The notes under the pieces are model-generated. The model ran no database searches. It was not told the origin of the DNA and was given only the letters and a program-made list of their open reading frames with translations. Shown here piece after piece: positions 1 to 39,722 of a DNA stretch of 39,722 nt (positions are counted from its first letter, which is position 1; each line of letters starts with the position of its first letter). The stretch comes from Pelomyxa schiedti (Eukaryota; Protista; Evosea): assembly GCA_020536535.1 (NCBI GenBank), contig JAHLWZ010000946.1:1-39722 (forward strand), read 5' to 3'. The translations under genes were made by a program, and so were the position numbers.

Positions 1-42
1 TTTTCCCCCTTTTTTTTGGTGTTGTTTGGTTTGGTATGTTAC

Positions 43-110
43 TTTCTTTGCGGTCCGTCCTGCGATCCCTGGCGGTTTTCTTTGCGGTCCGTCCTGCGGT
101 CCCTGGCGGT
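43..110. repeat. Tandem direct repeat, 2 x 34 bp (tttctttgcggtccgtcctgcgRtccctggcggt)
   Basis: Units 43-76 and 77-110 differ at one base (65 a / 99 g). The repeat is GC-rich within T-rich flanks. Confidence 0.9.
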
Positions 111-1022
111 TTACCTCTACAACATTTCAAGGGTTTGTTCAAAGATTTTACACACTTTTTCACATTTGCTTTTTCTCCCTTGAATACTGTTCATTACTTT
201 GTCTCAATCCTGTTCCTCAGTTTGCTTTGCCCAGCATTACCAGACCCACCTTAGGGTTGTCTGACCTGATGCTAGCACACATGAACTGACTTTGCTGTTA
301 ACATGAAAAAAGATACTTGGCCCTTTACCAGAACCCAACGATTGCAAGTTGGATTAAAAATTCTGAGTAGATTAATTTTTTCTGGGACCTACTCTATGTT
401 GGTCAGTCCTGCAACCAACCAAGGTTCTCCCCAACTTGCACAAGCTGGGGACCTTTTTTACCGATAAAAACCTCGTTTTTCCTTTGTTTGTTTTTGGAGC
501 CAAATAAAGGTACCCGAAATTGAGACATTGATCAGAAAGCCAAGAAAGGTCTTACATCATCACAGTGCAATTTAGAAATACCACTTATTAGGGGATTTCC
601 CGGTTTTTTTTTTTTTTGTGTTTTGTATTTGGCACCGGTATTATTTGGTATGCTGAATTATGGGTACTGATCGCTACGAGCTTGTGAGAAGAACAACTTG
701 GAGCCTTAGTTTTCGTGGTTGTATGACCATGTGGGAATACATGCTTGCTCTTGTTGCGTGTATTGCTGCTAAAAAAACATGGTGTTGTAACCTCAGTGTG
801 ATAAAATGTTGGTAAATTTATCCTTACAAACTGATTTGAAATGACAGTATAATACAGAGTGTTCCCAAGAATCAACTCACGATGGCATGCGGTACACTCT
901 AATCTCTTGAGCTGGAATAATAAGGGAGCCTGAGGCTTACAAGGCGAGGGTTGGGCAGCCCAGAATACCTACCAGAGGGTAGCTCTTCATCAGTGATGAT
1001 GTTGAAGTATAATTTCCAAAAG

Positions 1023-2673
1023 TATTTCAGGATAATTTCCCAAAGTATGTCTCCCGTGCAATCATTTCACATAAAATCACCTACAACTGGAATCGCTTAC
1101 GGAGTAAGGGAGTGGGTGTCCTGACTATAGGAATAAACATCAGATTTAGTGGTGAAGGGTCCTTTCCTCATAATTTCAGGAGCAAGCCAGGTGTATCAAA
1201 GGCAAAAGTGAGAACGAGTCAAGATGATACTTTGGGCAATACCAGGATTATCAACAACCTCACTTGCTACTGTATTTTGAAGACCTGTCACCTGAAGAAA
1301 GTAAGATAAGGAATTATGTTTGGGCTTTTTAAATCTCTGTAGATTTGAGGTGCTGAGTCATGTAAGAAGTGCATATCACAGGCATATCCATGGCTATCTT
1401 AAGCACTAGTGGGAACGGGAGAGGGGTGCTTCTCCATCATTACTCTGTGGTGTGTAGGTAGTTGTACAGGGAGGAAATAATGCCAATAATAAAAAGATCA
1501 TCTCCAGCAGTAAGGTGAACAGTCCCTACTTCGCAAAGAGACTCTACTGCCTGCCCTCGAGTTGTGTGTCTCTGGAAGGATATTAAAACATTCTTCCAAC
1601 TGAACCTGAAAATTACATGCACGTGGTATTCCGAGTTATGTCGATGGTCATTTTCTTGTCTTTCAGAAAGAGTAATCGGAATTCTCATTCCTCTTATCAA
1701 AGTGAGTGCATGACAAAATGGTTACCTTTATTACCATAAGTAGCAAGAGCATATTTCCTTTGTGTGTGTGTCAGAGCTATCTTATCTCTGAACATTGCCG
1801 TTTTGCCTACAGAAGAACTCCCTGTCAACTTACTTTTCCCGTTTCCAACTCCAATTTCGTGAGGTATCCGATTGTGGGAGGCGTCTCCTCAAAAAGGTTG
1901 TCCTATTCCTAATTAATAATATCCAGATTCATTGTGTAGACATTTTGATCACACCTGGTTTGTATCAGAGATAAGAATAACGGATACATTGAGAAAAAAG
2001 ACAAAGCTATTGCCGGAAATATTCAACGATTTCATGTAGACGAGTGATGGAGTCATTGGGGGCAATTCATCAAGAAAATTCAAGGAACTATTTAATCTGA
2101 AAAAACCACTAAGTTGTATTGCAAAGAATAGTACAAACGTTGCAAAACGGCAAAATCAGTCCAAGAGGATGGGTAGAATGCTAATCCAATGGAAGATACA
2201 CTCAGATCCTGGATTACTGGAGGAAATGCCGGTAATATCTTCGAGAGGCCACTAATATGTGGCATACTGATACTCAGTTGAAAGAAGGTCTTAATGTGAC
2301 ACACTGGAAATGATACATGCTTGCTGAAACGTCTATAATCTATTTACTAAATAAATTTTACGAAGAAGCTATCTACAAAACCTTTAACTCAACAAGAGGG
2401 TTGGACGAAATAGAAAAGTCAATTCGAAACTTTCCATACACGGAAACCCTTCACCAGAACTGTGGCTGATGCTATTTGAACCAAACAATTACAAAATAGG
2501 GTACTCTAGGTCACAAAGTACCTCAAATTAAGCTATCTCAGGATGGGTAGGGACAGAATAGCAAGAGGAAATGTGTTCAAGGTATCTCTACTTAGATCGA
2601 GCACATTCAAATTCTCAGTGAGAGGAATCACAAATTCCCCGTGAACAGGAAGGAAGAAGATATTATGATTCTT
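1023..2673 (-). pseudogene. Decayed LRR + tyrosine-kinase-like (Roco-type) kinase pseudogene; boundaries approximate
   Basis: Read on the mirror copy. LRR fragments: LNVLDLSRDTLNTFPLAILSLPILR*LNL, MKSLNISGNSF, NLFEETPPTIGYLTKLE. Kinase motifs: SLYNYLH, LVLKIAMD/(frameshift)/CDMHFLHDSAPQIYRDLKSPNI, VVDNP..WLAPEIMRKGPFTTKSDVYSY, VILCEMIARETYFGKLS*. In-frame stops and a frameshift are present, and no DFG motif is visible. Confidence 0.8.
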
Positions 2674-5006
2674 CATTCGATGCTGGACAATTGAAGGACG
2701 ACTGTGTGATATTAAAAAAGTGAGTACTTGGAGTTATCAAATATGCAGCACATTTTTGTTGCTAGTTACACATCAACATGGAAGCAAAATTTCGTATCCC
2801 ATCCAAAAAATCTTCATCGTACATTCAGTTCATTGAACTAGGGTGGTTGCTGAGTCGCTCAAACTCAAAAAAAAATGTTGAATACTACATCATTGCCACA
2901 GTGTAGTATGTTCCCCTGGAATTGAATACGAAAATAGCTTAAATAGAAGCACTGAGGTCCGTCGTCGCATAGAAAATGCCGCATTTTCCAACAAAAACAA
3001 AGAAATTTTTGTCCATCAAAAAATGAAAACCCCATCAACGGTCAAAAAAACCCTTGATAGTGGTGATTGCGTGCGCGTAACAAATATCCGTATCACAATG
3101 CCACGGGAAAGATGCATATCTTCCAACAAACAAATACCCTTCAAACAACATTCATCTGTCGCAAATGCAACCTGTTTCGACTAGTACTACTACATCTTCT
3201 ACGGGGGGGAATTTGAGCAATAGGACCGTGTTTGTTAGTGGCGAGGCGATGGGTGCTATTGTGGGGGGCGTGGCAACCAGAATGACGTTACTTCTCGCAG
3301 ATTTGGCTGGCGTGGTGTGCAAACATTTTCCTTTTGTCACTCAATTGTATTATTTTTGTTTTGGAAAACCACTATTTGTAAAACCACTATTATAAATATT
3401 TTCAGACCCACATTGGGGAGACTTCACTTTTTGAAAGGGTCCGACCAGACATCCAACATATGCACCAGCTTACCTCTGGACTTAAAATAGGGCTTGTTGA
3501 GATTCTGAAGGTTTCCAGCTTCAACAATAGGAAAAACTTATGTTAACGGAAGTACAGCTTGATCCCCTGGTTCCGAAGGGCTCTCTAAGGGCGTTTGCGG
3601 GCCCAACGCTGGAATATGATGAAATTTCTGTGGAACCAACTGGAAAACAAGCGGAGCCCCGACAGAAAGCAAGTGTCTCTGGAGTACAAACCGCAAACCC
3701 CAATGAAACTTATGTTGAGACAATACCACGAATTACGGCACTGTTGTACCAGATTAAGACTCTCTTGGAATGGCCGCTGGTATTTTACCTCCCCTGCCTC
3801 CCCTCTCCTAAAGCATTCAGGCTGCTGCTTCCATTACTCGCAATTCTGATTTGATTAATAAGAGGGTCACCACATTGGGCCGTATTGTGGATCATCTAGA
3901 AGAAGTTGTTCACCAATCAGGTATATTTCCTCTCCATACAGAACAATACTTTTGTCTTCTAACTAACAAACAGCGTGCGATTAATGACCGCTAAGTATTT
4001 CTATGGAAAAAGTTTTTGAAAAAATTTTTCATAATTTCTGACACATGAATTTGGATTTTTGTGTTTTTTGTGGTTTAGGGGTGTGTACACGAAACCCCTC
4101 AAAGGCGAAAATATTTGTGACATCACTAAACCAAATGCATGGCAGGGTGTTTGAATGGATAAATAAAAGTAGTCTTAGGTATACCCTTCTTCTACCATCT
4201 TCACTTGTCAATATCCACTGAATGTGTCTAGCTTCCACCAAGATATGTTCTCTCCTAGAGGATGTTGCACTCATCACAGCGGGTGCAGGATATACATCCT
4301 TGCCTGTCATTGTGTTGAGGCTCCAATATTCAACGCAAAATCGAATTGAACACTTTACTAGAACGCTGAGTATGGGTTATCGTGTCTTGCCACATCCACA
4401 TCAAGTAATTTCTTGAGCTCTTCCTTCTCCTTCTCATCTTTTTTCTAGATTAACTGTGTCTCTTCACATTGATGGATGTCAGCTTGCTCTCGTGGCCATT
4501 CCTCTAATCTCTCCAAGTTCTTGTGCTAAGTTTCCAGCTTCCATTACCTCTTGGCTGGGATTTAACGTACTTAGCTACTTCTACTACTTCCGATTTGTGC
4601 CCTTGGTGCTAGCAACATCAATTGCAACTACTTCTAGTGTCCAGTGTGGTTCACAGAGCCGATTGCACACAACCGCATGTACAACCCATCCTTACACTTT
4701 TCAACAAGTAATAATTCCACAGTTTAACCCAACTGGCTTCTTCCGCTCTTCATCGTGGTCCTACACGGTTGTTCAATGTACATTCTTACCACCTTGCCGT
4801 TTGACGGTCCAGCTCCAAGCAACCAGGTTCCAGTGAGGAAGCTTTTTTCAGGGTACTTGTTTATCCACCAATTGCAATTTCGGACCAATTGGAGAGCAGT
4901 TTTTGAAAAAAAATATGAAAAAAAAAGGTGCGAGATCCGCCGGTTTACTTTGTAGTCCTTTTTTTCAAACAAACCAAGGCCACAAACATCCCGCCCGTCG
5001 GACACC

Positions 5007-7165
5007 ATGACAAGCAAACTCAACAAAGAACTCACGATGGAGGGACCAATGATGGACGAGATGGGAGGGGAGCAGTACGATGCCGTTGTGAGCATTGAAG
5101 ATATCCAGGCTGTTCCTGGCCCCGATCCAGACGGCCTCGTCCGAAAATACGAAATCCAAGGCACTAAGCTAGATCCGATAACTGGTACGGAACTTGCAAC
5201 CGAGAAGTACATTGGCCTTATTACAACCAAATGGCGGCCCGTGCCGAAGGTGTGGCAGGCCATAGCGGTCAAATCCGCGGTCGTCAAACGCGTGGAAAGG
5301 TGTGGTGTGGCTTAGTTGGTTGTTTTTTGTATCGTATATACATTTTCCACATCTTGCTTGCTCTAGTTTGGTTTTTTTTACATTTGTTTTAACATATTTC
5401 TATTTCCAGGATCAACAAAGAAGTTTACATTGTTCAAGCTTATGATAGGCTGTGCCCAAACTTTAAGTTCCCGGTGACACCGGGCTGCGACTGTTGCTTG
5501 CCAGATTATGCCGTGATTGGTGATGCCGCTGTTCCTCGCCTAGGTTTGTGAGTTTATTATATTTATTACACTCACTGTAAAAACTCTTCACCACGGCACA
5601 GTCACGCAAAGAATCTTCCCTTCTCTTAAGTTACACTGAAACCACACAGGTTCGCCATTGTTTCAAGAAGGTGTGAATAATGTTGAATCGGGAAATCGCT
5701 TTATTGATGCTAGCCCTACTACTACTGCTGCTGATGCTGTTCGTCATTCCCTTGCTGAGGTTGAACATCATCGCCATAGCCCTGAAAATGTACCAGCAGC
5801 CTCCAGCAGGGATGACTCATCTGAACCCAGCCGTATTGGAATTGGCAGGATGCCCCCACAGCCTGCTGCATCTTTGCAACTGCGGGGCGACCGCGATGGT
5901 CGTCTTTGCCTTACTCCGGCAGTTCAACTGCCTCCTCCTGTTCTGAAGGCCCGTGCTCCTGGCATGAGTCTGCAAGTGATGCACCACGTCGATTCTCCTT
6001 TGTCACCAGTCCCTAAGCGTTGCAAGACTACAAGTAATGCTGGGCTTGGTAGTCTCAATGCGCCCATTGTACTGGAGGATGACCACGATGAGACACAACA
6101 CCCCGTTGCGCCGCATGCACAAGTTTCTTTGGTTGCTCCTCCGGTCATCAACTCGCCGCAACCAGAACAAATCAAGCCAGAATCCCCCCAATCCAGCGAC
6201 TCTGATCCGGTCCATGAGCAACAGCAAACTGGCTTTGATGCCGATACGGAAGCTGCTTGTGGCTCATATGTGCAGTGCGCCATTGGTGACATGAGGAGTG
6301 TTGTGGTGAGCGCCGTGTTGACGACGGGTCACGGCATCATCGCTTATGATAGAGAGGTAACCACAAGTCTCTTTTCCCTCTACTTTTTAGGTTCCTTTTG
6401 TGGCCTAACACCCCAAAAAACCCCCACACGCACACCACTAACACTACTCCAGGCAAATGAGGCCAATATTAGAGTCGCTGGTGGAGTCCAAACGGTACCA
6501 GGATTCTATTTGATCCAAGGAATAACATTATGCCGAAAAATGGACACGAACCAAGCGGTGTACATCATCAACGCAAGCACTGTTGTTGAGTGCAGGCTCT
6601 CACCCTCAATTGCCCACTTGTTTCCGGCACATATCGAGATAGACTTCGAGACCGCATCCGAAATCAGGAAACTCAAGTCTGAAGCTCTAGAAAGAAACAC
6701 AACCGCTGTCATAGGTACACTTGTCCACTCTGAGTTTGTTGATCCCTAACGTGTTCTCCAGATATGGCCTTTGGCGTGGTCAAACACTTTAATGGCAATA
6801 GTTACTGCGTGGTCTTACCAGACGGCACTCAGGCCAAGATATTTATCAAAAAGGCAGTTATGGAACTGATATACCCAAAACACCTGAAGAAAGGTGATGT
6901 AGCTGTCATATTGTATGGCTTGGTAGGACAACATGAGAAAGCCACAGATCCAAGTAAGTCCCCCTTCCCTCCTCGCACTTTCCCAAGTGAACTCACGAAC
7001 CCAATAGCAATGTTGTGCTGCATTCCAGACACCGGTTTCTTACAAGTCAATCCTACCTTTTTGGATGAGGCAGTTCGTGAGCGTCTGCAAGTGCTTGCTT
7101 TGGGAGAGTGTCAACTTACCAATGCCCACGTAGTTGGCCCAAGAAAGAAGAACAAGCGCTCTTGA
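5007..7165 (+). CDS. Six-exon gene, ~581 aa; putative multi-OB-fold (RPA70-like) ssDNA-binding protein
   Basis: Exons 5007-5299, 5410-5543, 5650-6356, 6453-6714, 6762-6953, 7008-7165 join in frame (1746 nt) with GT-AG sites; CTAAC branch points precede two of the acceptors. Layout: beta-rich N-domain, Pro/Ser-rich linker, two beta-rich domains ending LQVNP, basic tail PRKKNKRS. The gene model is solid; the family call is inferred. Confidence 0.65.
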
Positions 7166-7338
7166 CGAGCCAACTCTTCCCCTTCATCTTCGTCATCGTA
7201 GTCATCTCTGAATCGCCCCAAGCCAAAATCAAGCTTCTATCTTTGTTATTTCCCTTAAATGCAGTGGAAAAAATATGAAGATGTTTTGGCAATAGGGGGC
7301 AGAGGGTTGTGTAGTGTTGGGGTTTGGTTTGCTGTTCT

Positions 7339-8016
7339 TCAATCATTTCCTTGGTGCTGCTGGCGGTCGTTGCTGGAGACGGAGAGGGGAACCGCGGCCG
7401 TGATGCCTATCGGCACTGGGTTCTGTGTGAACTCCATTATCTGTGCGAGGCCTGTCTGGTCCATGCTGCACAAACTGTTTGTATCCGAACTTATGCATGT
7501 GATTAGTGCGGCGTGGCTAGGGAAGACGTGTTGCACTTTGGTGGCGACTCCGTGGTTCTGTTGCAGCTTCATCAGGTCAATCCCGTACAGGTTGCGGTAT
7601 CTCGCGCTGTTACTAACAACAACAAAGTCACTGCGCGGAACCTGTGTGTTGGGGGGAAGACTGAGAGTTGGGGGAGGTGGTAATAAAAGGAGCAGGAGTA
7701 GAAGAAAATGGGAAGGGAGGAAAAAAAAAAAAACCGCAAAAAGGCCGGTGATCGCGAAGTGACTGTCAAGCAGCTGCACCTCAGCAACGAGGCTTACGCT
7801 CGGCTACGTGGAAACCAAAGTGAACGACCTGGTTATCCTCATCCACAAGAACAAAAGCGGGGGCGGGGAGGATTTTACCTGAAGTGAAGTGGGGATCTCA
7901 AAGGAAACAGTCCCGTCTTTAAAAATCGCTGCTAGACGCCCAGAAGGCAAAATGTGGAAGGGCAACCTTGACAATCGGCAATTTCGCCACTGAGTGTACT
8001 CGACAGCCCCCAACAA
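7339..8016 (-). CDS. Multi-exon hypothetical protein with a WD40-like C-terminal repeat; 5' end unresolved
   Basis: Spliceable coding blocks (FKDGTVSFEIPTSLQ / PSVSLVAEVQLLDSHFAITGLFA / VPRSDFVVVSNSARYRNLYGIDL...VFPSHAALITCISSDTNSLCSMDQTGLAQIMEF). The last block resembles a GH...ITC...S.D...IW(D) WD repeat. Stop at 7339. Confidence 0.45.
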
Positions 8017-8167
8017 CTATCCCCATCTGAAAGTGACGTTGCGGTTGATGTCAAGGAAAAGTGTACCCCAACAAAAGAACAGCCTTAAGAAGCCCACGAT
8101 CCCTGTTCCATTTCTTCTTCGAAATCCCGTGTGTTCATCACCACAAAAACCAAACGTTGTTTGCAAC

Positions 8168-11100
8168 ATGCAGCCCTTCCTGGCCGCGTCTGCCTCTGCC
8201 ACGTCACCACACGCCTCCAAGTTAGTGCCTGGGGGGAGCGCCACCAGCACCACGTCGTCTTTCAAGCAACAGCAGCAGCAGCCGCAGGCCAGGCGACAAC
8301 CGTCGGTTGCGTCCATGGTTGGGGCGGCGATGACGCCCCATAATCGGGGGCTGGGGGGGAGCCGCGGCGGCGGGGCCGACGCGAGGGACACGGTGCCGCT
8401 GTCTCACCGATCCAACACGGGCGACGCCACGCTTCTGGCGCTCAAGAGGCTGGACACGCAGGGCATTCGCTCTTTTAAAAGGTACGGGGGGCGTGTCCCT
8501 TGTTGTTGTTGTGAATTGTGGGAGTCAACTGGGGACACATTTGTTCGTGGTTTCTGTGTTTCTAAATGGAAAACACAAACCAAAACAGGAACCAAATATC
8601 TTCAGACCGCCCAAGAGTATGCTAGTAGTCTTCCTTTCTATAGAGATTAAAAAAAGATTTTCGTTTTTTAGACAGCCCCTGTGGAAGCAGCTAATAGGGA
8701 AGATGTCCCACCAGATGCCGATATTCTGGACCCATTGTTTCGAATTGTTGACCCAATTGCCATTTCTCCACTTGTGAGTGAGCACCGTGATATTAGAGCC
8801 AAAATTGTTGACTCTGTTTCAGCGTCTTATCGGATTTCCATTTATTGGAGTACTGCTGTGCTGGGCTTTGCTTTTTATTTGCCTGGCAGTTGATCGCAGC
8901 TTGGAAAAATGGTATATTGGTGACAAGCCAGTTTGGTACAATTACACACCAATGGCCCTCACTTGGACGCTTTTCAACAGTGGCTATAATCAATGTACTT
9001 TTTCCCCCCCGTAGTCACTTTAACCTGCTTTATCAGCGTTTTCACTGTGGCAAGGATTGATTCCTGCAACGAATATGATTTTCGGAATTGTAATTACCAT
9101 CAGCTTTGTTTCAATACAAAATACTATGGAAAAAACTTCCCCTGTCGTTTTCCGCCATGTAACCTTCTCAAGTATCTCATTTTCAACTGACCCCTTTTTG
9201 TCCAGTTCTATACTGCCAAGTTCGTCATAATTTACTTTGCATTCTTATTTGTTCTCAATGTGCTCGTTTTCTGGTGTGGCCTCGAAACTGGTGGCCCTGT
9301 TGGAATTAAATTGGATGTGGATGTTGAGGGGCTTGAGGTTGACCCAAGGTCCCACTTCCCAAGACTTGCAACATGTGCCCTTTTTCCTTTTTCTATCTCT
9401 ACTCACACAACAACAACCAGTTGTAGCAGTCTTCTTTTCCAACTTGCAGATTTTCTTTCTGTTCCCCTTCCTGATCAAAGCCATGGGAATTCTGGATCCC
9501 AACCAAGTGGTGAGCAATCTGGTTGAGAAGGGCCTAAACACTGTCATCGAATCTATCAACTTGACAACATATGGCAACTCACGCAAGCATCAGGTGTGCC
9601 TGCTTTCGTTACCTCAATCGCGTCATTTATATTCTTTTTTTAAAAAGGAGTTGCAACAATCCACAACAAAAACCATTGATTGCCTGCTGGAGGGCACCCA
9701 TGCCTCCTCTGAAAAAGATGCAAATAAAGTTTTTTGCTCCATTGTAGTTGATGCTCTGTGCAGCTTTGGGATGCACTACGCCAACATTAAATCCAAGGTA
9801 CACTTCAAAATTTTTCTTCAAAAATCCTCACTCTGTTTGTTGTAGGCTTCAAAACAGTGGTTTGAAATTCCAACTTGGTTACGACGGTCACCTGATTTCT
9901 ACCTATTGTAATTTTCTATTCCCACAACAAAACGGAATAACTTCTCCAATGTAGAAATGATGATAGCATCCAAGAGTTGGTGCAACGTGAAACCTGGGTG
10001 GAATGGAAACTTATGCGTCAGTATCAGCACCTTTATTCTCAAGGGCTGATGACTTTCCACAATGATCTGTGCTACCACATTTGCATCAGCACCAGGATTC
10101 TTGGGCTAGCTTTCGCACACGAAGGACATGTAACAGGACTGGACTTGGCCATCAAATTTTTCAATACTTATCTTCGAGCTGGAATAAGTGCGTTATTGTG
10201 ATGTGGGGTGACTTCACTAAGAGTTACCCTGAATAGACTTTGGGGATATCAAAGTTGTTTATAATACACTTTTTCAGTACAGGGTGCTGGGTGAACGACT
10301 TCTTACTAGACACAGAGGTACAAACTAACAGTTATTCGACCGTTTCTCCTCTTATGTACCCAACAGATATTGAGCTGTCAACTGCAGTTCGTGCTGTCAA
10401 GATTGCTAAGTATGCCCTATATTACGCCGACCAATGCCGCGCAAGAGGCGGTGCCTTTTTGTTCCTTGTGGAAACAGTGGCCCAAGACTTGAGAGTACTG
10501 TGCGAAACAGCCTATTTCAGCTACTCATTGCCACAATTTGCGACATCAGAGAGCATGAATCAAAACAGAACAAAGAAGTACTCCGAAATTCATAGCAAAC
10601 TACTTGAGGTTCTCTTCCTTTTTCTTTTCACCAAGGGCAACTAATAACATAGTAATGCAGATATTCCTGAAGTTAGGAGATATGCCATGCCGAGATGTCC
10701 GCGGAGTTCTTCGCGCCCAAGTCATTCTTGCCACTTTCTATCTGCACCACAAGCAACAGGATCCTGCCAGGCAAATATCTTCGAAATTAAGAAGGTTCCC
10801 ACTTCTCCTAAAGAAAATAAAAGCTTTATTCTTTCCTGCCCAGGACGGAGTTCACTCCCACGCTGTATAGTATCTATTATGAGCTCAGCACTGGAACCAC
10901 AAAAGAGTTCTGGGAAGTCAGTGAGCGAGGATACAACTTTGCCTACATGGACAAGCGGCTTGCGAACTACCTGAATGAGTTCTATGGATGGTTTGAATGG
11001 TTCACACCAAATGAAGGAGACAAGGACTCAGGGTTCTGGTCAACAGCCGGTAATGGCTACACCTTTTTTCCCAGCCATTATTAACCTGGCCCTCAGAAGG

Positions 11101-11188
11101 AAAAAAGCTGAAAGTGCAACAAGAACTCACCAATTTCGATGAATCAGATGATGAAGAAGACAACCAAGACGGCGCGGGTTTGCTGTAA
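8168..11188 (+). CDS. Multi-exon membrane protein with a conserved helical C-terminal domain (DUF2254-like family, by recall)
   Basis: ATG at 8168, low-complexity N-terminus, several hydrophobic segments (8800-9480). Then WVEWKLMRQY, IKFFNTYLRAGINFGDIKVVYNTLFQYR, FLVETVAQDL, RGVLRAQVILATFYL, EFWEVSERGYNFAYM. The last exon EGKKLKVQQELTNFDESDDEEDNQDGAGLL ends at TAA 11186-11188. Confidence 0.7.
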
Positions 11189-11296
11189 AATAACACACAA
11201 GTTTATTGTAAAGGAGGGAATAAAAAATAAAGCGGGTATAAGAACCCCTATTCCCATTTATTGTGTTCCCATTTGGCAAAAACAAAGTGCCTCTCT

Positions 11297-13211: not shown

Positions 13212-13443
13212 TCTTCGTTTCTGTTGTTCGAATCCCTTGTGTGGCTTTTTTTTTCTTCTTGTAGGAAACGCGTTTGTGATTGGAGAATTTGCGGTGAAAA
13301 AGTCCTGAGAAGGGACACACGGAAGTGTTACAGGACAATGCATCATTCAACCCTTGTCAGTTTTATACTGACAATCATAAAACAAAGATGCCTTTTTATG
13401 GAATGGTTTTTCTTTTCCATTGTTTCTAGTGTTGATTGGGGTC

Positions 13444-28426: not shown

Positions 28427-28534
28427 AGAGAGGCACTTTGTTTTTGCCAAATGGGAACACAATAAATGGGAATAGGGGTTCTTATACCCGCTTTATTTTT
28501 TATTCCCTCCTTTACAATAAACTTGTGTGTTATT

Positions 28535-31500
28535 TTACAGCAAACCCGCGCCGTCTTGGTTGTCTTCTTCATCATCTGATTCATCGAAATTGGTGAGTTC
28601 TTGTTGCACTTTCAGCTTTTTTCCTTCTGAGGGCCAGGTTAATAATGGCTGGGAAAAAAGGTGTAGCCATTACCGGCTGTTGACCAGAACCCTGAGTCCT
28701 TGTCTCCTTCATTTGGTGTGAACCATTCAAACCATCCATAGAACTCATTCAGGTAGTTCGCAAGCCGCTTGTCCATGTAGGCAAAGTTGTATCCTCGCTC
28801 ACTGACTTCCCAGAACTCTTTTGTGGTTCCAGTGCTGAGCTCATAATAGATACTATACAGCGTGGGAGTGAACTCCGTCCTGGGCAGGAAAGAATAAAGC
28901 TTTTATTTTCTTTAGGAGAAGTGGGAACCTTCTTAATTTCGAAGATATTTGCCTGGCAGGATCCTGTTGCTTGTGGTGCAGATAGAAAGTGGCAAGAATG
29001 ACTTGGGCGCGAAGAACTCCGCGGACATCTCGGCATGGCATATCTCCTAACTTCAGGAATATCTGCATTACTATGTTATTAGTTGCCCTTGGTGAAAAGA
29101 AAAAGGAAGAGAACCTCAAGTAGTTTGCTATGAATTTCGGAGTACTTCTTTGTTCTGTTTTGATTCATGCTCTCTGATGTCGCAAATTGTGGCAATGAGT
29201 AGCTGAAATAGGCTGTTTCGCACAGTACTCTCAAGTCTTGGGCCACTGTTTCCACAAGGAACAAAAAGGCACCGCCTCTTGCGCGGCATTGGTCGGCGTA
29301 ATATAGGGCATACTTAGCAATCTTGACAGCACGAACTGCAGTTGACAGCTCAATATCTGTTGGGTACATAAGAGGAGAAACGGTCGAATAACTGTTAGTT
29401 TGTACCTCTGTGTCTAGTAAGAAGTCGTTCACCCAGCACCCTGTACTGAAAAAGTGTATTATAAACAACTTTGATATCCCCAAAGTCTATTCAGGGTAAC
29501 TCTTAGTGAAGTCACCCCACATCACAATAACGCACTTATTCCAGCTCGAAGATAAGTATTGAAAAATTTGATGGCCAAGTCCAGTCCTGTTACATGTCCT
29601 TCGTGTGCGAAAGCTAGCCCAAGAATCCTGGTGCTGATGCAAATGTGGTAGCACAGATCATTGTGGAAAGTCATCAGCCCTTGAGAATAAAGGTGCTGAT
29701 ACTGACGCATAAGTTTCCATTCCACCCAGGTTTCACGTTGCACCAACTCTTGGATGCTATCATCATTTCTACATTGGAGAAGTTATTCCGTTTTGTTGTG
29801 GGAATAGAAAATTACAATAGGTAGAAATCAGGTGACCGTCGTAACCAAGTTGGAATTTCAAACCACTGTTTTGAAGCCTACAACAAACAGAGTGAGGATT
29901 TTTGAAGAAAAATTTTGAAGTGTACCTTGGATTTAATGTTGGCGTAGTGCATCCCAAAGCTGCACAGAGCATCAACTACAATGGAGCAAAAAACTTTATT
30001 TGCATCTTTTTCAGAGGAGGCATGGGTGCCCTCCAGCAGGCAATCAATGGTTTTTGTTGTGGATTGTTGCAACTCCTTTTTAAAAAAAGAATATAAATGA
30101 CGCGATTGAGGTAACGAAAGCAGGCACACCTGATGCTTGCGTGAGTTGCCATATGTTGTCAAGTTGATAGATTCGATGACAGTGTTTAGGCCCTTCTCAA
30201 CCAGATTGCTCACCACTTGGTTGGGATCCAGAATTCCCATGGCTTTGATCAGGAAGGGGAACAGAAAGAAAATCTGCAAGTTGGAAAAGAAGACTGCTAC
30301 AACTGGTTGTTGTTGTGTGAGTAGAGATAGAAAAAGGAAAAAGGGCACATGTTGCAAGTCTTGGGAAGTGGGACCTTGGGTCAACCTCAAGCCCCTCAAC
30401 ATCCACATCCAATTTAATTCCAACAGGGCCACCAGTTTCGAGGCCACACCAGAAAACGAGCACATTGAGAACAAATAAGAATGCAAAGTAAATTATGACG
30501 AACTTGGCAGTATAGAACTGGACAAAAAGGGGTCAGTTGAAAATGAGATACTTGAGAAGGTTACATGGCGGAAAACGACAGGGGAAGTTTTTTCCATAGT
30601 ATTTTGTATTGAAACAAAGCTGATGGTAATTACAATTCCGAAAATCATATTCGTTGCAGGAATCAATCCTTGCCACAGTGAAAACGCTGATAAAGCAGGT
30701 TAAAGTGACTACGGGGGGGAAAAAGTACATTGATTATAGCCACTGTTGAAAAGCGTCCAAGTGAGGGCCATTGGTGTGTAATTGTACCAAACTGGCTTGT
30801 CACCAATATACCATTTTTCCAAGCTGCGATCAACTGCCAGGCAAATAAAAAGCAAAGCCCAGCACAGCAGTACTCCAATAAATGGAAATCCGATAAGACG
30901 CTGAAACAGAGTCAACAATTTTGGCTCTAATATCACGGTGCTCACTCACAAGTGGAGAAATGGCAATTGGGTCAACAATTCGAAACAATGGGTCCAGAAT
31001 ATCGGCATCTGGTGGGACATCTTCCCTATTAGCTGCTTCCACAGGGGCTGTCTAAAAAACGAAAATCTTTTTTTAATCTCTATAGAAAGGAAGACTACTA
31101 GCATACTCTTGGGCGGTCTGAAGATATTTGGTTCCTGTTTTGGTTTGTGTTTTCCATTTAGAAACACAGAAACCACGAACAAATGTGTCCCCAGTTGACT
31201 CCCACAATTCACAACAACAACAAGGGACACGCCCCCCGTACCTTTTAAAAGAGCGAATGCCCTGCGTGTCCAGCCTCTTGAGCGCCAGAAGCGTGGCGTC
31301 GCCCGTGTTGGATCGGTGAGACAGCGGCACCGTGTCCCTCGCGTCGGCCCCGCCGCCGCGGCTCCCCCCCAGCCCCCGATTATGGGGCGTCATCGCCGCC
31401 CCAACCATGGACGCAACCGACGGTTGTCGCCTGGCCTGCGGCTGCTGCTGCTGTTGCTTGAAAGACGACGTGGTGCTGGTGGCGCTCCCCCCAGGCACTA

Positions 31501-31555
31501 ACTTGGAGGCGTGTGGTGACGTGGCAGAGGCAGACGCGGCCAGGAAGGGCTGCAT
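28535..31555 (-). CDS. Mirror copy of the DUF2254-like membrane protein gene
   Basis: Reverse complement of 8168-11188. Confidence 0.7.
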
Positions 31556-31706
31556 GTTGCAAACAACGTTTGGTTTTTGTGGTGATGAACACACGGGATT
31601 TCGAAGAAGAAATGGAACAGGGATCGTGGGCTTCTTAAGGCTGTTCTTTTGTTGGGGTACACTTTTCCTTGACATCAACCGCAACGTCACTTTCAGATGG
31701 GGATAG

Positions 31707-32384
31707 TTGTTGGGGGCTGTCGAGTACACTCAGTGGCGAAATTGCCGATTGTCAAGGTTGCCCTTCCACATTTTGCCTTCTGGGCGTCTAGCAGCGATTT
31801 TTAAAGACGGGACTGTTTCCTTTGAGATCCCCACTTCACTTCAGGTAAAATCCTCCCCGCCCCCGCTTTTGTTCTTGTGGATGAGGATAACCAGGTCGTT
31901 CACTTTGGTTTCCACGTAGCCGAGCGTAAGCCTCGTTGCTGAGGTGCAGCTGCTTGACAGTCACTTCGCGATCACCGGCCTTTTTGCGGTTTTTTTTTTT
32001 TTCCTCCCTTCCCATTTTCTTCTACTCCTGCTCCTTTTATTACCACCTCCCCCAACTCTCAGTCTTCCCCCCAACACACAGGTTCCGCGCAGTGACTTTG
32101 TTGTTGTTAGTAACAGCGCGAGATACCGCAACCTGTACGGGATTGACCTGATGAAGCTGCAACAGAACCACGGAGTCGCCACCAAAGTGCAACACGTCTT
32201 CCCTAGCCACGCCGCACTAATCACATGCATAAGTTCGGATACAAACAGTTTGTGCAGCATGGACCAGACAGGCCTCGCACAGATAATGGAGTTCACACAG
32301 AACCCAGTGCCGATAGGCATCACGGCCGCGGTTCCCCTCTCCGTCTCCAGCAACGACCGCCAGCAGCACCAAGGAAATGATTGA
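31707..32384 (+). CDS. Mirror copy of the WD40-like hypothetical gene
   Basis: Reverse complement of 7339-8016. Confidence 0.45.
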
Positions 32385-32557
32385 AGAACAGCAAACCAAA
32401 CCCCAACACTACACAACCCTCTGCCCCCTATTGCCAAAACATCTTCATATTTTTTCCACTGCATTTAAGGGAAATAACAAAGATAGAAGCTTGATTTTGG
32501 CTTGGGGCGATTCAGAGATGACTACGATGACGAAGATGAAGGGGAAGAGTTGGCTCG

Positions 32558-34716
32558 TCAAGAGCGCTTGTTCTTCTTTCTTGGGCCAACTACGTGGGCA
32601 TTGGTAAGTTGACACTCTCCCAAAGCAAGCACTTGCAGACGCTCACGAACTGCCTCATCCAAAAAGGTAGGATTGACTTGTAAGAAACCGGTGTCTGGAA
32701 TGCAGCACAACATTGCTATTGGGTTCGTGAGTTCACTTGGGAAAGTGCGAGGAGGGAAGGGGGACTTACTTGGATCTGTGGCTTTCTCATGTTGTCCTAC
32801 CAAGCCATACAATATGACAGCTACATCACCTTTCTTCAGGTGTTTTGGGTATATCAGTTCCATAACTGCCTTTTTGATAAATATCTTGGCCTGAGTGCCG
32901 TCTGGTAAGACCACGCAGTAACTATTGCCATTAAAGTGTTTGACCACGCCAAAGGCCATATCTGGAGAACACGTTAGGGATCAACAAACTCAGAGTGGAC
33001 AAGTGTACCTATGACAGCGGTTGTGTTTCTTTCTAGAGCTTCAGACTTGAGTTTCCTGATTTCGGATGCGGTCTCGAAGTCTATCTCGATATGTGCCGGA
33101 AACAAGTGGGCAATTGAGGGTGAGAGCCTGCACTCAACAACAGTGCTTGCGTTGATGATGTACACCGCTTGGTTCGTGTCCATTTTTCGGCATAATGTTA
33201 TTCCTTGGATCAAATAGAATCCTGGTACCGTTTGGACTCCACCAGCGACTCTAATATTGGCCTCATTTGCCTGGAGTAGTGTTAGTGGTGTGCGTGTGGG
33301 GGTTTTTTGGGGTGTTAGGCCACAAAAGGAACCTAAAAAGTAGAGGGAAAAGAGACTTGTGGTTACCTCTCTATCATAAGCGATGATGCCGTGACCCGTC
33401 GTCAACACGGCGCTCACCACAACACTCCTCATGTCACCAATGGCGCACTGCACATATGAGCCACAAGCAGCTTCCGTATCGGCATCAAAGCCAGTTTGCT
33501 GTTGCTCATGGACCGGATCAGAGTCGCTGGATTGGGGGGATTCTGGCTTGATTTGTTCTGGTTGCGGCGAGTTGATGACCGGAGGAGCAACCAAAGAAAC
33601 TTGTGCATGCGGCGCAACGGGGTGTTGTGTCTCATCGTGGTCATCCTCCAGTACAATGGGCGCATTGAGACTACCAAGCCCAGCATTACTTGTAGTCTTG
33701 CAACGCTTAGGGACTGGTGACAAAGGAGAATCGACGTGGTGCATCACTTGCAGACTCATGCCAGGAGCACGGGCCTTCAGAACAGGAGGAGGCAGTTGAA
33801 CTGCCGGAGTAAGGCAAAGACGACCATCGCGGTCGCCCCGCAGTTGCAAAGATGCAGCAGGCTGTGGGGGCATCCTGCCAATTCCAATACGGCTGGGTTC
33901 AGATGAGTCATCCCTGCTGGAGGCTGCTGGTACATTTTCAGGGCTATGGCGATGATGTTCAACCTCAGCAAGGGAATGACGAACAGCATCAGCAGCAGTA
34001 GTAGTAGGGCTAGCATCAATAAAGCGATTTCCCGATTCAACATTATTCACACCTTCTTGAAACAATGGCGAACCTGTGTGGTTTCAGTGTAACTTAAGAG
34101 AAGGGAAGATTCTTTGCGTGACTGTGCCGTGGTGAAGAGTTTTTACAGTGAGTGTAATAAATATAATAAACTCACAAACCTAGGCGAGGAACAGCGGCAT
34201 CACCAATCACGGCATAATCTGGCAAGCAACAGTCGCAGCCCGGTGTCACCGGGAACTTAAAGTTTGGGCACAGCCTATCATAAGCTTGAACAATGTAAAC
34301 TTCTTTGTTGATCCTGGAAATAGAAATATGTTAAAACAAATGTAAAAAAAACCAAACTAGAGCAAGCAAGATGTGGAAAATGTATATACGATACAAAAAA
34401 CAACCAACTAAGCCACACCACACCTTTCCACGCGTTTGACGACCGCGGATTTGACCGCTATGGCCTGCCACACCTTCGGCACGGGCCGCCATTTGGTTGT
34501 AATAAGGCCAATGTACTTCTCGGTTGCAAGTTCCGTACCAGTTATCGGATCTAGCTTAGTGCCTTGGATTTCGTATTTTCGGACGAGGCCGTCTGGATCG
34601 GGGCCAGGAACAGCCTGGATATCTTCAATGCTCACAACGGCATCGTACTGCTCCCCTCCCATCTCGTCCATCATTGGTCCCTCCATCGTGAGTTCTTTGT
34701 TGAGTTTGCTTGTCAT
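32558..34716 (-). CDS. Mirror copy of the putative RPA70-like OB-fold gene
   Basis: Reverse complement of 5007-7165. Confidence 0.65.
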
Positions 34717-37049
34717 GGTGTCCGACGGGCGGGATGTTTGTGGCCTTGGTTTGTTTGAAAAAAAGGACTACAAAGTAAACCGGCGGATCTCGCACCTTTT
34801 TTTTTCATATTTTTTTTCAAAAACTGCTCTCCAATTGGTCCGAAATTGCAATTGGTGGATAAACAAGTACCCTGAAAAAAGCTTCCTCACTGGAACCTGG
34901 TTGCTTGGAGCTGGACCGTCAAACGGCAAGGTGGTAAGAATGTACATTGAACAACCGTGTAGGACCACGATGAAGAGCGGAAGAAGCCAGTTGGGTTAAA
35001 CTGTGGAATTATTACTTGTTGAAAAGTGTAAGGATGGGTTGTACATGCGGTTGTGTGCAATCGGCTCTGTGAACCACACTGGACACTAGAAGTAGTTGCA
35101 ATTGATGTTGCTAGCACCAAGGGCACAAATCGGAAGTAGTAGAAGTAGCTAAGTACGTTAAATCCCAGCCAAGAGGTAATGGAAGCTGGAAACTTAGCAC
35201 AAGAACTTGGAGAGATTAGAGGAATGGCCACGAGAGCAAGCTGACATCCATCAATGTGAAGAGACACAGTTAATCTAGAAAAAAGATGAGAAGGAGAAGG
35301 AAGAGCTCAAGAAATTACTTGATGTGGATGTGGCAAGACACGATAACCCATACTCAGCGTTCTAGTAAAGTGTTCAATTCGATTTTGCGTTGAATATTGG
35401 AGCCTCAACACAATGACAGGCAAGGATGTATATCCTGCACCCGCTGTGATGAGTGCAACATCCTCTAGGAGAGAACATATCTTGGTGGAAGCTAGACACA
35501 TTCAGTGGATATTGACAAGTGAAGATGGTAGAAGAAGGGTATACCTAAGACTACTTTTATTTATCCATTCAAACACCCTGCCATGCATTTGGTTTAGTGA
35601 TGTCACAAATATTTTCGCCTTTGAGGGGTTTCGTGTACACACCCCTAAACCACAAAAAACACAAAAATCCAAATTCATGTGTCAGAAATTATGAAAAATT
35701 TTTTCAAAAACTTTTTCCATAGAAATACTTAGCGGTCATTAATCGCACGCTGTTTGTTAGTTAGAAGACAAAAGTATTGTTCTGTATGGAGAGGAAATAT
35801 ACCTGATTGGTGAACAACTTCTTCTAGATGATCCACAATACGGCCCAATGTGGTGACCCTCTTATTAATCAAATCAGAATTGCGAGTAATGGAAGCAGCA
35901 GCCTGAATGCTTTAGGAGAGGGGAGGCAGGGGAGGTAAAATACCAGCGGCCATTCCAAGAGAGTCTTAATCTGGTACAACAGTGCCGTAATTCGTGGTAT
36001 TGTCTCAACATAAGTTTCATTGGGGTTTGCGGTTTGTACTCCAGAGACACTTGCTTTCTGTCGGGGCTCCGCTTGTTTTCCAGTTGGTTCCACAGAAATT
36101 TCATCATATTCCAGCGTTGGGCCCGCAAACGCCCTTAGAGAGCCCTTCGGAACCAGGGGATCAAGCTGTACTTCCGTTAACATAAGTTTTTCCTATTGTT
36201 GAAGCTGGAAACCTTCAGAATCTCAACAAGCCCTATTTTAAGTCCAGAGGTAAGCTGGTGCATATGTTGGATGTCTGGTCGGACCCTTTCAAAAAGTGAA
36301 GTCTCCCCAATGTGGGTCTGAAAATATTTATAATAGTGGTTTTACAAATAGTGGTTTTCCAAAACAAAAATAATACAATTGAGTGACAAAAGGAAAATGT
36401 TTGCACACCACGCCAGCCAAATCTGCGAGAAGTAACGTCATTCTGGTTGCCACGCCCCCCACAATAGCACCCATCGCCTCGCCACTAACAAACACGGTCC
36501 TATTGCTCAAATTCCCCCCCGTAGAAGATGTAGTAGTACTAGTCGAAACAGGTTGCATTTGCGACAGATGAATGTTGTTTGAAGGGTATTTGTTTGTTGG
36601 AAGATATGCATCTTTCCCGTGGCATTGTGATACGGATATTTGTTACGCGCACGCAATCACCACTATCAAGGGTTTTTTTGACCGTTGATGGGGTTTTCAT
36701 TTTTTGATGGACAAAAATTTCTTTGTTTTTGTTGGAAAATGCGGCATTTTCTATGCGACGACGGACCTCAGTGCTTCTATTTAAGCTATTTTCGTATTCA
36801 ATTCCAGGGGAACATACTACACTGTGGCAATGATGTAGTATTCAACATTTTTTTTTGAGTTTGAGCGACTCAGCAACCACCCTAGTTCAATGAACTGAAT
36901 GTACGATGAAGATTTTTTGGATGGGATACGAAATTTTGCTTCCATGTTGATGTGTAACTAGCAACAAAAATGTGCTGCATATTTGATAACTCCAAGTACT
37001 CACTTTTTTAATATCACACAGTCGTCCTTCAATTGTCCAGCATCGAATG

Positions 37050-38700
37050 AAGAATCATAATATCTTCTTCCTTCCTGTTCACGGGGAATTTGTGATTCCT
37101 CTCACTGAGAATTTGAATGTGCTCGATCTAAGTAGAGATACCTTGAACACATTTCCTCTTGCTATTCTGTCCCTACCCATCCTGAGATAGCTTAATTTGA
37201 GGTACTTTGTGACCTAGAGTACCCTATTTTGTAATTGTTTGGTTCAAATAGCATCAGCCACAGTTCTGGTGAAGGGTTTCCGTGTATGGAAAGTTTCGAA
37301 TTGACTTTTCTATTTCGTCCAACCCTCTTGTTGAGTTAAAGGTTTTGTAGATAGCTTCTTCGTAAAATTTATTTAGTAAATAGATTATAGACGTTTCAGC
37401 AAGCATGTATCATTTCCAGTGTGTCACATTAAGACCTTCTTTCAACTGAGTATCAGTATGCCACATATTAGTGGCCTCTCGAAGATATTACCGGCATTTC
37501 CTCCAGTAATCCAGGATCTGAGTGTATCTTCCATTGGATTAGCATTCTACCCATCCTCTTGGACTGATTTTGCCGTTTTGCAACGTTTGTACTATTCTTT
37601 GCAATACAACTTAGTGGTTTTTTCAGATTAAATAGTTCCTTGAATTTTCTTGATGAATTGCCCCCAATGACTCCATCACTCGTCTACATGAAATCGTTGA
37701 ATATTTCCGGCAATAGCTTTGTCTTTTTTCTCAATGTATCCGTTATTCTTATCTCTGATACAAACCAGGTGTGATCAAAATGTCTACACAATGAATCTGG
37801 ATATTATTAATTAGGAATAGGACAACCTTTTTGAGGAGACGCCTCCCACAATCGGATACCTCACGAAATTGGAGTTGGAAACGGGAAAAGTAAGTTGACA
37901 GGGAGTTCTTCTGTAGGCAAAACGGCAATGTTCAGAGATAAGATAGCTCTGACACACACACAAAGGAAATATGCTCTTGCTACTTATGGTAATAAAGGTA
38001 ACCATTTTGTCATGCACTCACTTTGATAAGAGGAATGAGAATTCCGATTACTCTTTCTGAAAGACAAGAAAATGACCATCGACATAACTCGGAATACCAC
38101 GTGCATGTAATTTTCAGGTTCAGTTGGAAGAATGTTTTAATATCCTTCCAGAGACACACAACTCGAGGGCAGGCAGTAGAGTCTCTTTGCGAAGTAGGGA
38201 CTGTTCACCTTACTGCTGGAGATGATCTTTTTATTATTGGCATTATTTCCTCCCTGTACAACTACCTACACACCACAGAGTAATGATGGAGAAGCACCCC
38301 TCTCCCGTTCCCACTAGTGCTTAAGATAGCCATGGATATGCCTGTGATATGCACTTCTTACATGACTCAGCACCTCAAATCTACAGAGATTTAAAAAGCC
38401 CAAACATAATTCCTTATCTTACTTTCTTCAGGTGACAGGTCTTCAAAATACAGTAGCAAGTGAGGTTGTTGATAATCCTGGTATTGCCCAAAGTATCATC
38501 TTGACTCGTTCTCACTTTTGCCTTTGATACACCTGGCTTGCTCCTGAAATTATGAGGAAAGGACCCTTCACCACTAAATCTGATGTTTATTCCTATAGTC
38601 AGGACACCCACTCCCTTACTCCGTAAGCGATTCCAGTTGTAGGTGATTTTATGTGAAATGATTGCACGGGAGACATACTTTGGGAAATTATCCTGAAATA
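37050..38700 (+). pseudogene. Mirror copy of the LRR + TKL kinase pseudogene
   Basis: TAG at 37188 inside an LRR; YRDLKSPN at ~38382-38405; WLAPE at 38534; TGA at 38694. Confidence 0.8.
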
Positions 38701-39612
38701 CTTTTGGAAATTATACTTCAACATCATCACTGATGAAGAGCTACCCTCTGGTAGGTATTCTGGGCTGCCCAACCCTCGCCTTGTAAGCCTCAGGCTCCCT
38801 TATTATTCCAGCTCAAGAGATTAGAGTGTACCGCATGCCATCGTGAGTTGATTCTTGGGAACACTCTGTATTATACTGTCATTTCAAATCAGTTTGTAAG
38901 GATAAATTTACCAACATTTTATCACACTGAGGTTACAACACCATGTTTTTTTAGCAGCAATACACGCAACAAGAGCAAGCATGTATTCCCACATGGTCAT
39001 ACAACCACGAAAACTAAGGCTCCAAGTTGTTCTTCTCACAAGCTCGTAGCGATCAGTACCCATAATTCAGCATACCAAATAATACCGGTGCCAAATACAA
39101 AACACAAAAAAAAAAAAAACCGGGAAATCCCCTAATAAGTGGTATTTCTAAATTGCACTGTGATGATGTAAGACCTTTCTTGGCTTTCTGATCAATGTCT
39201 CAATTTCGGGTACCTTTATTTGGCTCCAAAAACAAACAAAGGAAAAACGAGGTTTTTATCGGTAAAAAAGGTCCCCAGCTTGTGCAAGTTGGGGAGAACC
39301 TTGGTTGGTTGCAGGACTGACCAACATAGAGTAGGTCCCAGAAAAAATTAATCTACTCAGAATTTTTAATCCAACTTGCAATCGTTGGGTTCTGGTAAAG
39401 GGCCAAGTATCTTTTTTCATGTTAACAGCAAAGTCAGTTCATGTGTGCTAGCATCAGGTCAGACAACCCTAAGGTGGGTCTGGTAATGCTGGGCAAAGCA
39501 AACTGAGGAACAGGATTGAGACAAAGTAATGAACAGTATTCAAGGGAGAAAAAGCAAATGTGAAAAAGTGTGTAAAATCTTTGAACAAACCCTTGAAATG
39601 TTGTAGAGGTAA

Positions 39613-39680
39613 ACCGCCAGGGACCGCAGGACGGACCGCAAAGAAAACCGCCAGGGATCGCAGGACGGACCGCAAAGAAA
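39613..39680. repeat. Mirror copy of the 2 x 34-bp tandem repeat
   Basis: Reverse complement of 43-110. Confidence 0.9.
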
Positions 39681-39722
39681 GTAACATACCAAACCAAACA
39701 ACACCAAAAAAAAGGGGGAAAA

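What the first reader, a model, noticed from the sequence alone, without database searches (positions are those of the whole stretch)
1..39722. The entire window is a 39.7-kb palindrome of ordinary protein-coding genes
Seen: 19,730-bp arms with no detectable indel, including introns, homopolymers and pseudogene DNA, around a 262-bp loop; both ends stop at exactly mirror positions. Known: natural giant palindromes exist in protists (rDNA of Tetrahymena, Dictyostelium, Physarum), and hairpin-ended linear DNA also assembles as mirror contigs. Inference: a non-rDNA palindromic minichromosome or amplicon would be novel. However, perfect identity plus symmetric ends is also what an assembler gives when it walks through a fold-back chimera, which I consider more likely.
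Basis: partly seen in the sequence, partly recalled or inferred. Interest (0 to 1): 0.8.

Follow-up and report, generated by a model that had tools for sequence, protein, structure and literature searches.

The report
Mirror contig from amplification fold-back artefact
The 39.7-kb mirror-image contig is real in the file, but it is very probably a fold-back artefact of single-cell DNA amplification that the assembler copied, because public data sets of the same amoeba continue past the fold point into different, non-mirrored DNA.

Summary
The window is the whole contig C946. Arms 1-19730 and 19993-39722 are exact reverse complements around a 262-bp spacer.

The palindrome is almost certainly not biological.
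- **Source.** The assembly (52,367,397 b, 5337 contigs) matches the published Pelomyxa schiedti genome. All of its DNA came from phi29 whole-genome amplification of single cells and was assembled with hybrid SPAdes.
- **Reads.** In three public runs of that study, contigs cross the left arm and spacer to 19999. They then continue 235-262 letters into unlike sequence, with the same first 30 letters in all three. No contig of any of the four runs enters the right arm through the junction.
- **Junction.** The native and fold-back forms share 7 nt (CTTTTGT) 262 nt from its complement. These are the modal overlap and distance of phi29 inverted chimeras.
- **Ends.** The outer ends lie in a dispersed repeat, an ordinary contig break that is mirrored because both arms follow one graph path.
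- **Second case.** The unrelated neighbour contig C945 is also a whole-contig palindrome. This scan had already flagged C945 and other mirror contigs in this genome.

What is really there is one ordinary 20-kb nuclear locus: an MFS transporter, RPL26, a PDK1-like kinase and a PF04008 gene. The assembly counts it twice and has lost its true continuation.

The parts
1..19730 (+). Left arm. Together with the spacer it is the native single-copy nuclear locus.
   Evidence: Contigs of runs X1-X3 cover 14500-19999 colinearly. A gene's first exon in the spacer and its intron cross 19730/19731 intact.
1..112 (.). Dispersed repeat at the contig end. This is the ordinary reason the contig stops. Its mirror is 39611-39722.
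   Evidence: Window 1-112 matches C4060 (two places, 99%) and C4587 and C734 (98%). Many more repeat hits fall within 1-600.
12072..12767 (-). Exon-sized ORF of an MFS transporter gene.
   Evidence: Pfam MFS_1, E 1.3e-18, 67.5 bits against a cut-off of 33.4.
16102..16557 (+). ORF holding the C-terminal exon of ribosomal protein L26 (uL24).
   Evidence: Pfam Ribosomal_L26, E 9.8e-11, 42.4 bits against a cut-off of 28.8.
16851..18778 (-). PDK1-like protein kinase gene in several exons, with a C-terminal PH domain.
   Evidence: Pfam PH_3, E 3.7e-13, on 16851-17156(-). Kinase motifs appear in the minus-strand ORFs at 17449-18527 and 18458-18778. The kinase subfamily is my inference from the PH_3 domain and the motifs.
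18836..19953 (-). Gene with a PF04008 (Adenosine_kin) domain. Its ATG is at 19953, exon 1 lies in the spacer, and the first intron crosses 19730/19731.
   Evidence: Pfam PF04008, E 1.1e-11, on 19201-19422(-). The ATG and a 45-codon exon ending at a GT donor were read. The exon-intron model is inferred and was not checked with RNA.
19731..19992 (+). 262-bp spacer. It is native unique DNA and forms the loop of the fold-back.
   Evidence: All 182 mismatches to the reverse complement lie here. Run contigs cover it colinearly with the left arm.
19993..19999 (+). 7-nt overlap CTTTTGT, shared by the native continuation and the reverse complement of 19724-19730. This is the template-switch point.
   Evidence: Run contigs fit up to 19999 and then diverge. 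Sequence comparison.
20000..39722 (+). Mirror copy of 1-19723. It is artefactual in this position: the native genome continues here with other sequence.
   Evidence: In X1, X2 and X3 the contigs go on from 19999 with the same 30 letters, unlike 20000 onward. That continuation is missing from the assembly.

Best explanation
The contig is an assembly copy of a phi29 (MDA) inverted chimera, not a structure of the amoeba's genome. Proposed steps, all inferred:
1. During single-cell whole-genome amplification, a growing strand that had copied the locus up to 19999 was displaced.
2. Its 3' end, CTTTTGT, annealed to the complementary ACAAAAG at 19724-19730, 262 nt back on the same or a sister displaced strand.
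3. The polymerase then copied the left arm backwards.
4. Hybrid SPAdes, using Illumina plus Nanopore reads of amplified DNA in single-cell mode, followed this junction. It traversed the same graph path a second time in the opposite direction.

This forces the two arms to be identical base for base. It also makes both ends stop at the same repeat-caused break. The real locus is single-copy: left arm, spacer, then a different continuation that the final assembly lacks.
For: - **Same assembly as the paper.** G000 has 52,367,397 bases in 5337 contigs. The Pelomyxa schiedti paper reports 52.4 Mb and 5337 scaffolds.
- **All DNA was amplified.** It was Illustra GenomiPhi-amplified DNA from seven single cells. 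The Nanopore library was made from T7-endonuclease-treated amplified DNA. Assembly was by SPAdes --sc (PMC8887013).
- **Native continuation seen.** In X1, X2 and X3, contigs cover left arm and spacer to 19999 and then run on 235-262 letters into unlike sequence with an identical 30-letter start. X1 carries reference-like alleles and X3 carries other alleles at 19107, 19282, 19469 and 19712. So at least two haplotypes or data sets share the native form.
- **Fold-back junction not seen.** Depth at 20126-20300 is 0 in X1, X3 and X4, and no contig crosses 19992/19993 into the arm.
- **Overlap.** There is a 7-nt overlap at the junction. A blunt random join would give 7 or more matching bases with probability about 4^-7 (my own calculation).
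- **Fit to the literature.** The review PMC9984789 states that inverted chimeras dominate MDA chimeras (85-91%). Their overlap length peaks at 7 nt, their distance peaks at 250-300 nt, chimeric rates reach 42-76% in long reads, and each event is unique to one reaction. Pervasive palindromic Nanopore reads after MDA are also documented in PMC13265396.
- **Ordinary ends.** The contig ends lie in a dispersed repeat.
- **Second case.** The unrelated contig C945 is also a whole-contig palindrome, making 2 of the 12 contigs C940-C951.
- **No scaffolding join.** The window has no N.
Against: - Only Logan contigs could be laid, not raw reads. Contigs drop rare variants, so the fold-back junction could exist at low frequency in these runs. 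It must exist in at least one library or long read that I could not see.
- Only 4 runs of the study were offered, all filed under one sample, so their independence as separate amplifications is inferred from their differing alleles.
- I could not show in which library the junction arose, or whether Illumina k-mers or Nanopore reads carried it into the assembly.
- No unamplified DNA exists for this organism in the data. A minority natural palindrome therefore cannot be formally excluded.
Confidence: 0.8

Rival explanations
1. The contig is still an artefact, but no phi29 chimeric molecule was the cause. Either a Nanopore ligation-library or strand-follow-on inverted read misled the assembler, or the de Bruijn graph was mis-traversed at the short T/G-rich inverted microrepeat.
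For: Ligation-based Nanopore libraries are reported to create false inverted-repeat chimeric reads (abstract of PMC13141652, listed). The junction lies in low-complexity T/G-rich sequence. The native continuation is missing from the assembly. C945 folds at a native imperfect inverted repeat of about 90-100 bp, where a graph error is easy.
Against: From my own knowledge, a strand-follow-on read folds at a fragment end with no loop and no overlap. Here there is a 262-nt single-copy loop and a 7-nt overlap, the modal values for MDA chimeras. A 7-nt repeat is far below the k-mer sizes used (21-121), so a physical junction sequence was probably present in some reads.
Confidence: 0.15
2. A real palindromic amplicon or minichromosome of ordinary genes exists in Pelomyxa nuclei, perhaps in a minority of nuclei or in one cell, beside the normal linear locus.
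For: Natural fold-back amplification also uses short inverted microhomologies. Pelomyxa is multinucleate (my own knowledge). Contigs cannot show that rare forms are absent (caveat).
Against: Three runs continue through the junction into non-mirrored sequence without a contig break, and none shows the fold-back. Contig depths show no 2x excess of arm over spacer: X1 20 against 22.2, X3 23.5 against 41.3. This is weak evidence, since there is only one figure per contig. The ends are a dispersed repeat with no visible telomere-like array. A second unrelated contig of nearly the same size has the same form. Every library was phi29-amplified.
Confidence: 0.03
3. The contig is a hairpin-ended linear DNA (a telomere-resolvase-type or viral element) that assembles as a mirror contig.
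Against: The fold point lies about 40 bp upstream of an ordinary nuclear gene's start codon. The same DNA continues into other sequence in three runs. The gene content is housekeeping nuclear genes with introns, and nothing viral or plasmid-like was seen.
Confidence: 0.01

Closest known systems
phi29 MDA inverted (fold-back) chimeras and the palindromic long reads and contigs they cause
   Same: The DNA was amplified by phi29. Adjacent segments are on opposite strands of the same locus. The overlap is 7 nt and the segments lie 262 nt apart, both at the reported modes. The junction was not seen in the contigs of four runs, and the assembly holds at least one more mirror contig.
   Different: The size of the assembled product (19.7-kb arms filling a whole contig) is larger than a typical single chimeric read segment. 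The arms were probably extended along the assembly graph rather than read from one molecule. The library of origin was not identified.
Natural giant palindromes of protists (extrachromosomal rDNA of Tetrahymena, Physarum and Dictyostelium)
   Same: Long, perfectly matching inverted arms around a short non-palindromic centre, in a protist.
   Different: There is no rDNA and no telomeres at the ends. The junction is absent from the contigs of the runs examined, the native continuation is present, and the DNA source was amplified.
Palindromic gene amplification by fold-back priming or breakage-fusion-bridge in yeast and tumour cells
   Same: A short inverted microhomology next to the fold point and a spacer of a few hundred bp.
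   Different: Those are found in unamplified DNA with raised copy number. Here there is no sign of raised copy number, and the structure is not seen in three data sets that cover the site.

Membership tests
phi29 MDA inverted chimera | Template DNA was amplified by multiple displacement amplification | tested here: met
   PMC8887013 Methods state that all genome sequencing used GenomiPhi-amplified single cells. The assembly size and contig number match G000.
phi29 MDA inverted chimera | Two adjacent segments map to opposite strands of the same region, less than 10 kb apart | tested here: met
   The right arm is the reverse complement of the left arm and starts 262 nt after the left arm ends.
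phi29 MDA inverted chimera | Short overlap (mostly 5-8 nt) shared by both segments at the junction | tested here: met
   CTTTTGT at 19993-19999 is shared by the native continuation and the reverse complement of 19724-19730. The literature mode is 7 nt.
phi29 MDA inverted chimera | Junction absent from the original genome, and the native sequence continues differently | tested here: met
   Contigs of X1, X2 and X3 continue from 19999 into the same unlike sequence, and none crosses into the right arm. Caveat: these are contigs, not raw reads.
phi29 MDA inverted chimera | Junction confined to one amplification reaction | not testable with these tools
   Raw reads of the seven libraries and the Nanopore run were not available. 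Only four runs were offered, as Logan contigs.
Natural palindromic minichromosome or amplicon | Junction present in every cell or library | tested here: not met
   No contig with the fold-back junction was found in four runs, and three show the non-mirrored continuation.
Natural palindromic minichromosome or amplicon | Arms at about twice the depth of the spacer when collapsed | tested here: inconclusive
   Contig word depths give arm against spacer-bearing contig as 20 against 22.2 (X1), 15.9 against 13.3 (X2) and 23.5 against 41.3 (X3). There is no 2x excess. But there is only one figure per contig, and the amplification is uneven.
Natural palindromic minichromosome or amplicon | Defined molecule ends (telomere repeats) at both outer ends | tested here: not met
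   The ends lie in a dispersed repeat shared with C4060, C4587 and C734, and no telomere-like array is visible in 1-420.

The most novel reading that the evidence does not exclude
A real palindromic amplicon of this 20-kb gene block, formed by fold-back at the 7-nt inverted microhomology, exists in a minority of nuclei or in one of the sequenced Pelomyxa cells alongside the normal locus. The assembly happened to capture it.
Probability: 0.03. Interest if true: 0.6.

Novelty: not a real feature. Interest (0 to 1): 0.07.

Why it matters
As biology it does not matter, because the palindrome is an artefact. It matters as quality control in three ways.
- **Duplicated genes.** The public Pelomyxa schiedti assembly contains whole-contig mirror duplications: 2 of the 12 contigs I sampled, with more flagged by this scan. 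These falsely double genes. The paper reports 8.6% duplicated BUSCOs and two identical, uncompletable NifS genes.
- **Lost sequence.** Here the true continuation upstream of the PF04008 gene is missing from the assembly.
- **Other findings in this genome.** Findings of the type 'perfect palindrome' or 'inverted duplication joined by microhomology' in this genome should be read with phi29 chimeras in mind before any biological claim is made.

Tried and rejected
- **Native continuation in the assembly.** I searched G000 for the 30-letter start of the native continuation with up to 2 mismatches. There was no match, so the continuation is not in the final assembly.
- **Second copy of the locus.** I searched G000 with 17000-21000 and with 1-1500 for a second, non-mirrored copy. 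Only C946 itself and dispersed repeats or paralogue fragments came up.
- **Fetching a public contig with the full continuation.** I tried two exact-ORF look-ups. Neither ORF is on record.
- **Rate of mirror contigs.** The rate therefore rests on 12 contigs.
- **Scaffolding by P_RNA_scaffolder as the cause.** Rejected, because the window has no N.
- **C945 as a variant of the same locus.** Rejected, because blastn finds no hits between the C945 pieces and the window.
- **tRNA scan of the arm.** It found no tRNA genes.
- **Pfam scans.** Several ORFs gave no family. Most are probably non-coding or antisense frames.
Full report
**Observation.** Comparing the window with its own reverse complement, base by base and without gaps, gives 182 mismatches, all between 19731 and 19992. 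Arms 1-19730 and 19993-39722 are therefore exact reverse complements around a 262-bp spacer. There is no N in the window. The window is the complete contig C946 of an assembly of 52,367,397 bases in 5337 contigs, so the 'mirror ends' are simply the two ends of the contig.

**Source of the DNA.** Earlier notes of this scan name the genome as Pelomyxa schiedti. The paper describing that genome reports 52.4 Mb in 5337 scaffolds, which matches G000. Its Methods give these details (PMC8887013):
- All genomic DNA was whole-genome amplified from single micromanipulated cells with the Illustra Single Cell GenomiPhi kit (phi29 multiple displacement amplification).
- Seven cells were sequenced with Illumina.
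- Nanopore libraries were made from T7-endonuclease-I-treated amplified DNA.
- Everything was co-assembled with SPAdes in single-cell mode.

No unamplified DNA went into the assembly.

**Test with public data.** Four runs of one study hold the region. I laid their contigs on 14500-20300, which covers the left arm, the spacer and 308 b of the right arm.
- In X1, X2 and X3, a contig covers the end of the left arm and the spacer colinearly up to 19999. It then continues for 262, 262 and 235 letters that do not fit the window.
- The first 30 of these letters are identical in all three runs and differ from the window from 20000 onward.
- No contig of any run passes the junction into the right arm. 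Depth in 20126-20300 is zero in X1, X3 and X4. In X2 it comes from one 61-letter fragment, which sits at the exact mirror position of the left-arm fragment 19554-19612.
- X1 carries the reference alleles. X3 differs at 19107, 19282, 19469 and 19712 and at several indels. So the same native continuation is attached to at least two allelic versions.

One caveat applies: these are run-level contigs, which show what is present but not the absence of rare forms.

**The junction.** The native form and the contig agree up to 19999. The last 7 bases, CTTTTGT (19993-19999), are the reverse complement of ACAAAAG at 19724-19730, the end of the left arm. So the fold-back has a 7-nt overlap and a 262-nt loop. 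The review of MDA chimeras (PMC9984789) makes these points:
- Inverted chimeras are the dominant class (85-91%).
- Their overlap length peaks at 7 nt, with 5-8 nt in most.
- The distance between the two segments peaks at 250-300 nt.
- Long-read data from single-cell-level input reach chimeric rates of 42-76%.
- Each event is unique to one reaction.

Palindromic Nanopore reads after MDA, and the damage they do to assemblies, are also documented (PMC13265396). The junction here sits on both modal values.

**Which side is native.** On the minus strand an ATG at 19953 opens a 45-codon exon that ends at a GT donor. The following pyrimidine-rich intron crosses 19730/19731 into the left arm. The next ORF downstream (19201-19422, minus) matches Pfam PF04008. 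The left arm plus the spacer therefore carries an intact gene start. The right-arm copy lacks its first exon in the proper orientation. The chimeric join is thus at 19992-19999, about 40 bp upstream of that start codon. This agrees with the read evidence.

**Why the arms are perfect and the ends symmetric.** This part is my inference from how de Bruijn graph assemblers work. In such a graph both strands of a sequence are one path. A contig that passes the chimeric junction re-uses the same path in reverse, so the arms are identical by construction whatever the allelic variation. One search shows about 20 variant sites in 5.5 kb among the runs. Both ends also stop at the same graph break. That break is ordinary: window 1-112 matches C4060, C4587 and C734 at 98-99%, and the first 600 b hit many contigs. 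There is no telomere-like array.

**Recurrence.** Contigs are ordered by length. Of the 12 contigs C940-C951, two are whole-contig palindromes: C946 and its neighbour C945 (39,745 b).
- In C945 the first 3000 b equal the reverse complement of the last 3000 b.
- Its sequence is unrelated to the window.
- Its ungapped centre is 341 b, of which about 87 b at each edge form an imperfect inverted repeat of roughly 99 b (partly overlapping the perfect arm) with two substitutions and two indels. The centre therefore looks like a native inverted repeat at which the fold-back happened.

C945 is the piece an earlier first-stage note flagged (s1-377961). Further mirror contigs are noted but not checked by me: s1-611453 (3.4 kb), s1-607433 (22.9 kb) and s1-377970.

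**What is really there.** It is one ordinary single-copy nuclear locus of about 20 kb with intron-containing genes:
- an MFS transporter (12072-12767, minus);
- ribosomal protein L26 (16102-16557, plus);
- a PDK1-like kinase with a PH_3 domain (16851-18778, minus);
- a PF04008 gene (18836-19953, minus);
- several ORFs without a family.

The assembly carries this locus twice and lacks its true continuation.

**Verdict.**
- Artefact overall: about 0.95.
- Within that, a phi29 fold-back chimera taken up by the hybrid assembly: 0.8.
- Another library or graph artefact: 0.15.
- A real palindromic amplicon in a minority of nuclei: about 0.03. It is not formally excluded, because only contigs of amplified DNA were available.
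- Novelty: not a real feature.
- Interest: low. It does serve as a warning for this assembly and for other palindrome findings in it.

Noticed in passing
G000:C945 (39,745 b); loci L017, L018, L019: An unrelated contig next in the length order is also a whole-contig palindrome, with the terminal 3 kb exact. Its 341-b ungapped centre holds an imperfect inverted repeat of roughly 99 b per side (two substitutions, two indels), about 87 b of it inside the centre, around a core of about 150 b. It looks like a native inverted repeat at which the fold-back occurred. So 2 of the 12 contigs C940-C951 are mirror contigs.
   Followed up: partly
window 1-112 and 1-600 (mirror 39123-39722): The contig ends lie in a dispersed repeat family. 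Window 1-112 includes two copies of a unit of about 37 b and matches C4060 (several places), C4587 and C734 at 97-99%. Positions 464-600 hit dozens of contigs at 74-82%.
   Followed up: partly
window 15520-19712: Run contigs differ from the assembly and from each other at about 11 substitutions and 10 small indels in 5.5 kb (for example 19107 C>T, 19282 T>C, 19469 G>T, 19712 A>G). This is allelic variation between cells or nuclei. It makes the zero-difference arms look like one path used twice.
   Followed up: no
window 18880 / 20004 (run X4): One low-depth contig (3.65) joins 18880 to 20004. Since 20004 onward is the reverse complement of 19719 and below, this could be a second, different inverted chimera in another library. 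The short side is only 29 letters, so it may be spurious.
   Followed up: no
window 19728 (run X2): In X2 only, a contig leaves the window after 19728, at the A-run at the start of the spacer, into 255 unlike letters. This may be another chimera, or an allele with an insertion.
   Followed up: no
window 1029-1469 against G000:C954:19280-19847; window 17000-17271 against G000:C313:28061-28296: There are diverged second copies elsewhere in the genome: 88-89% identity for a non-annotated stretch, and 77% for the PH-domain exon of the PDK1-like kinase (a likely paralogue).
   Followed up: no
Whole genome G000; paper PMC8887013: [quoted passage not shown] It also reports 8.6% duplicated BUSCOs. Both facts would be explained by fold-back contigs. 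Many notes of this scan on 'perfect palindromes' and 'inverted duplications joined by microhomology' in this genome deserve the same check.
   Followed up: no
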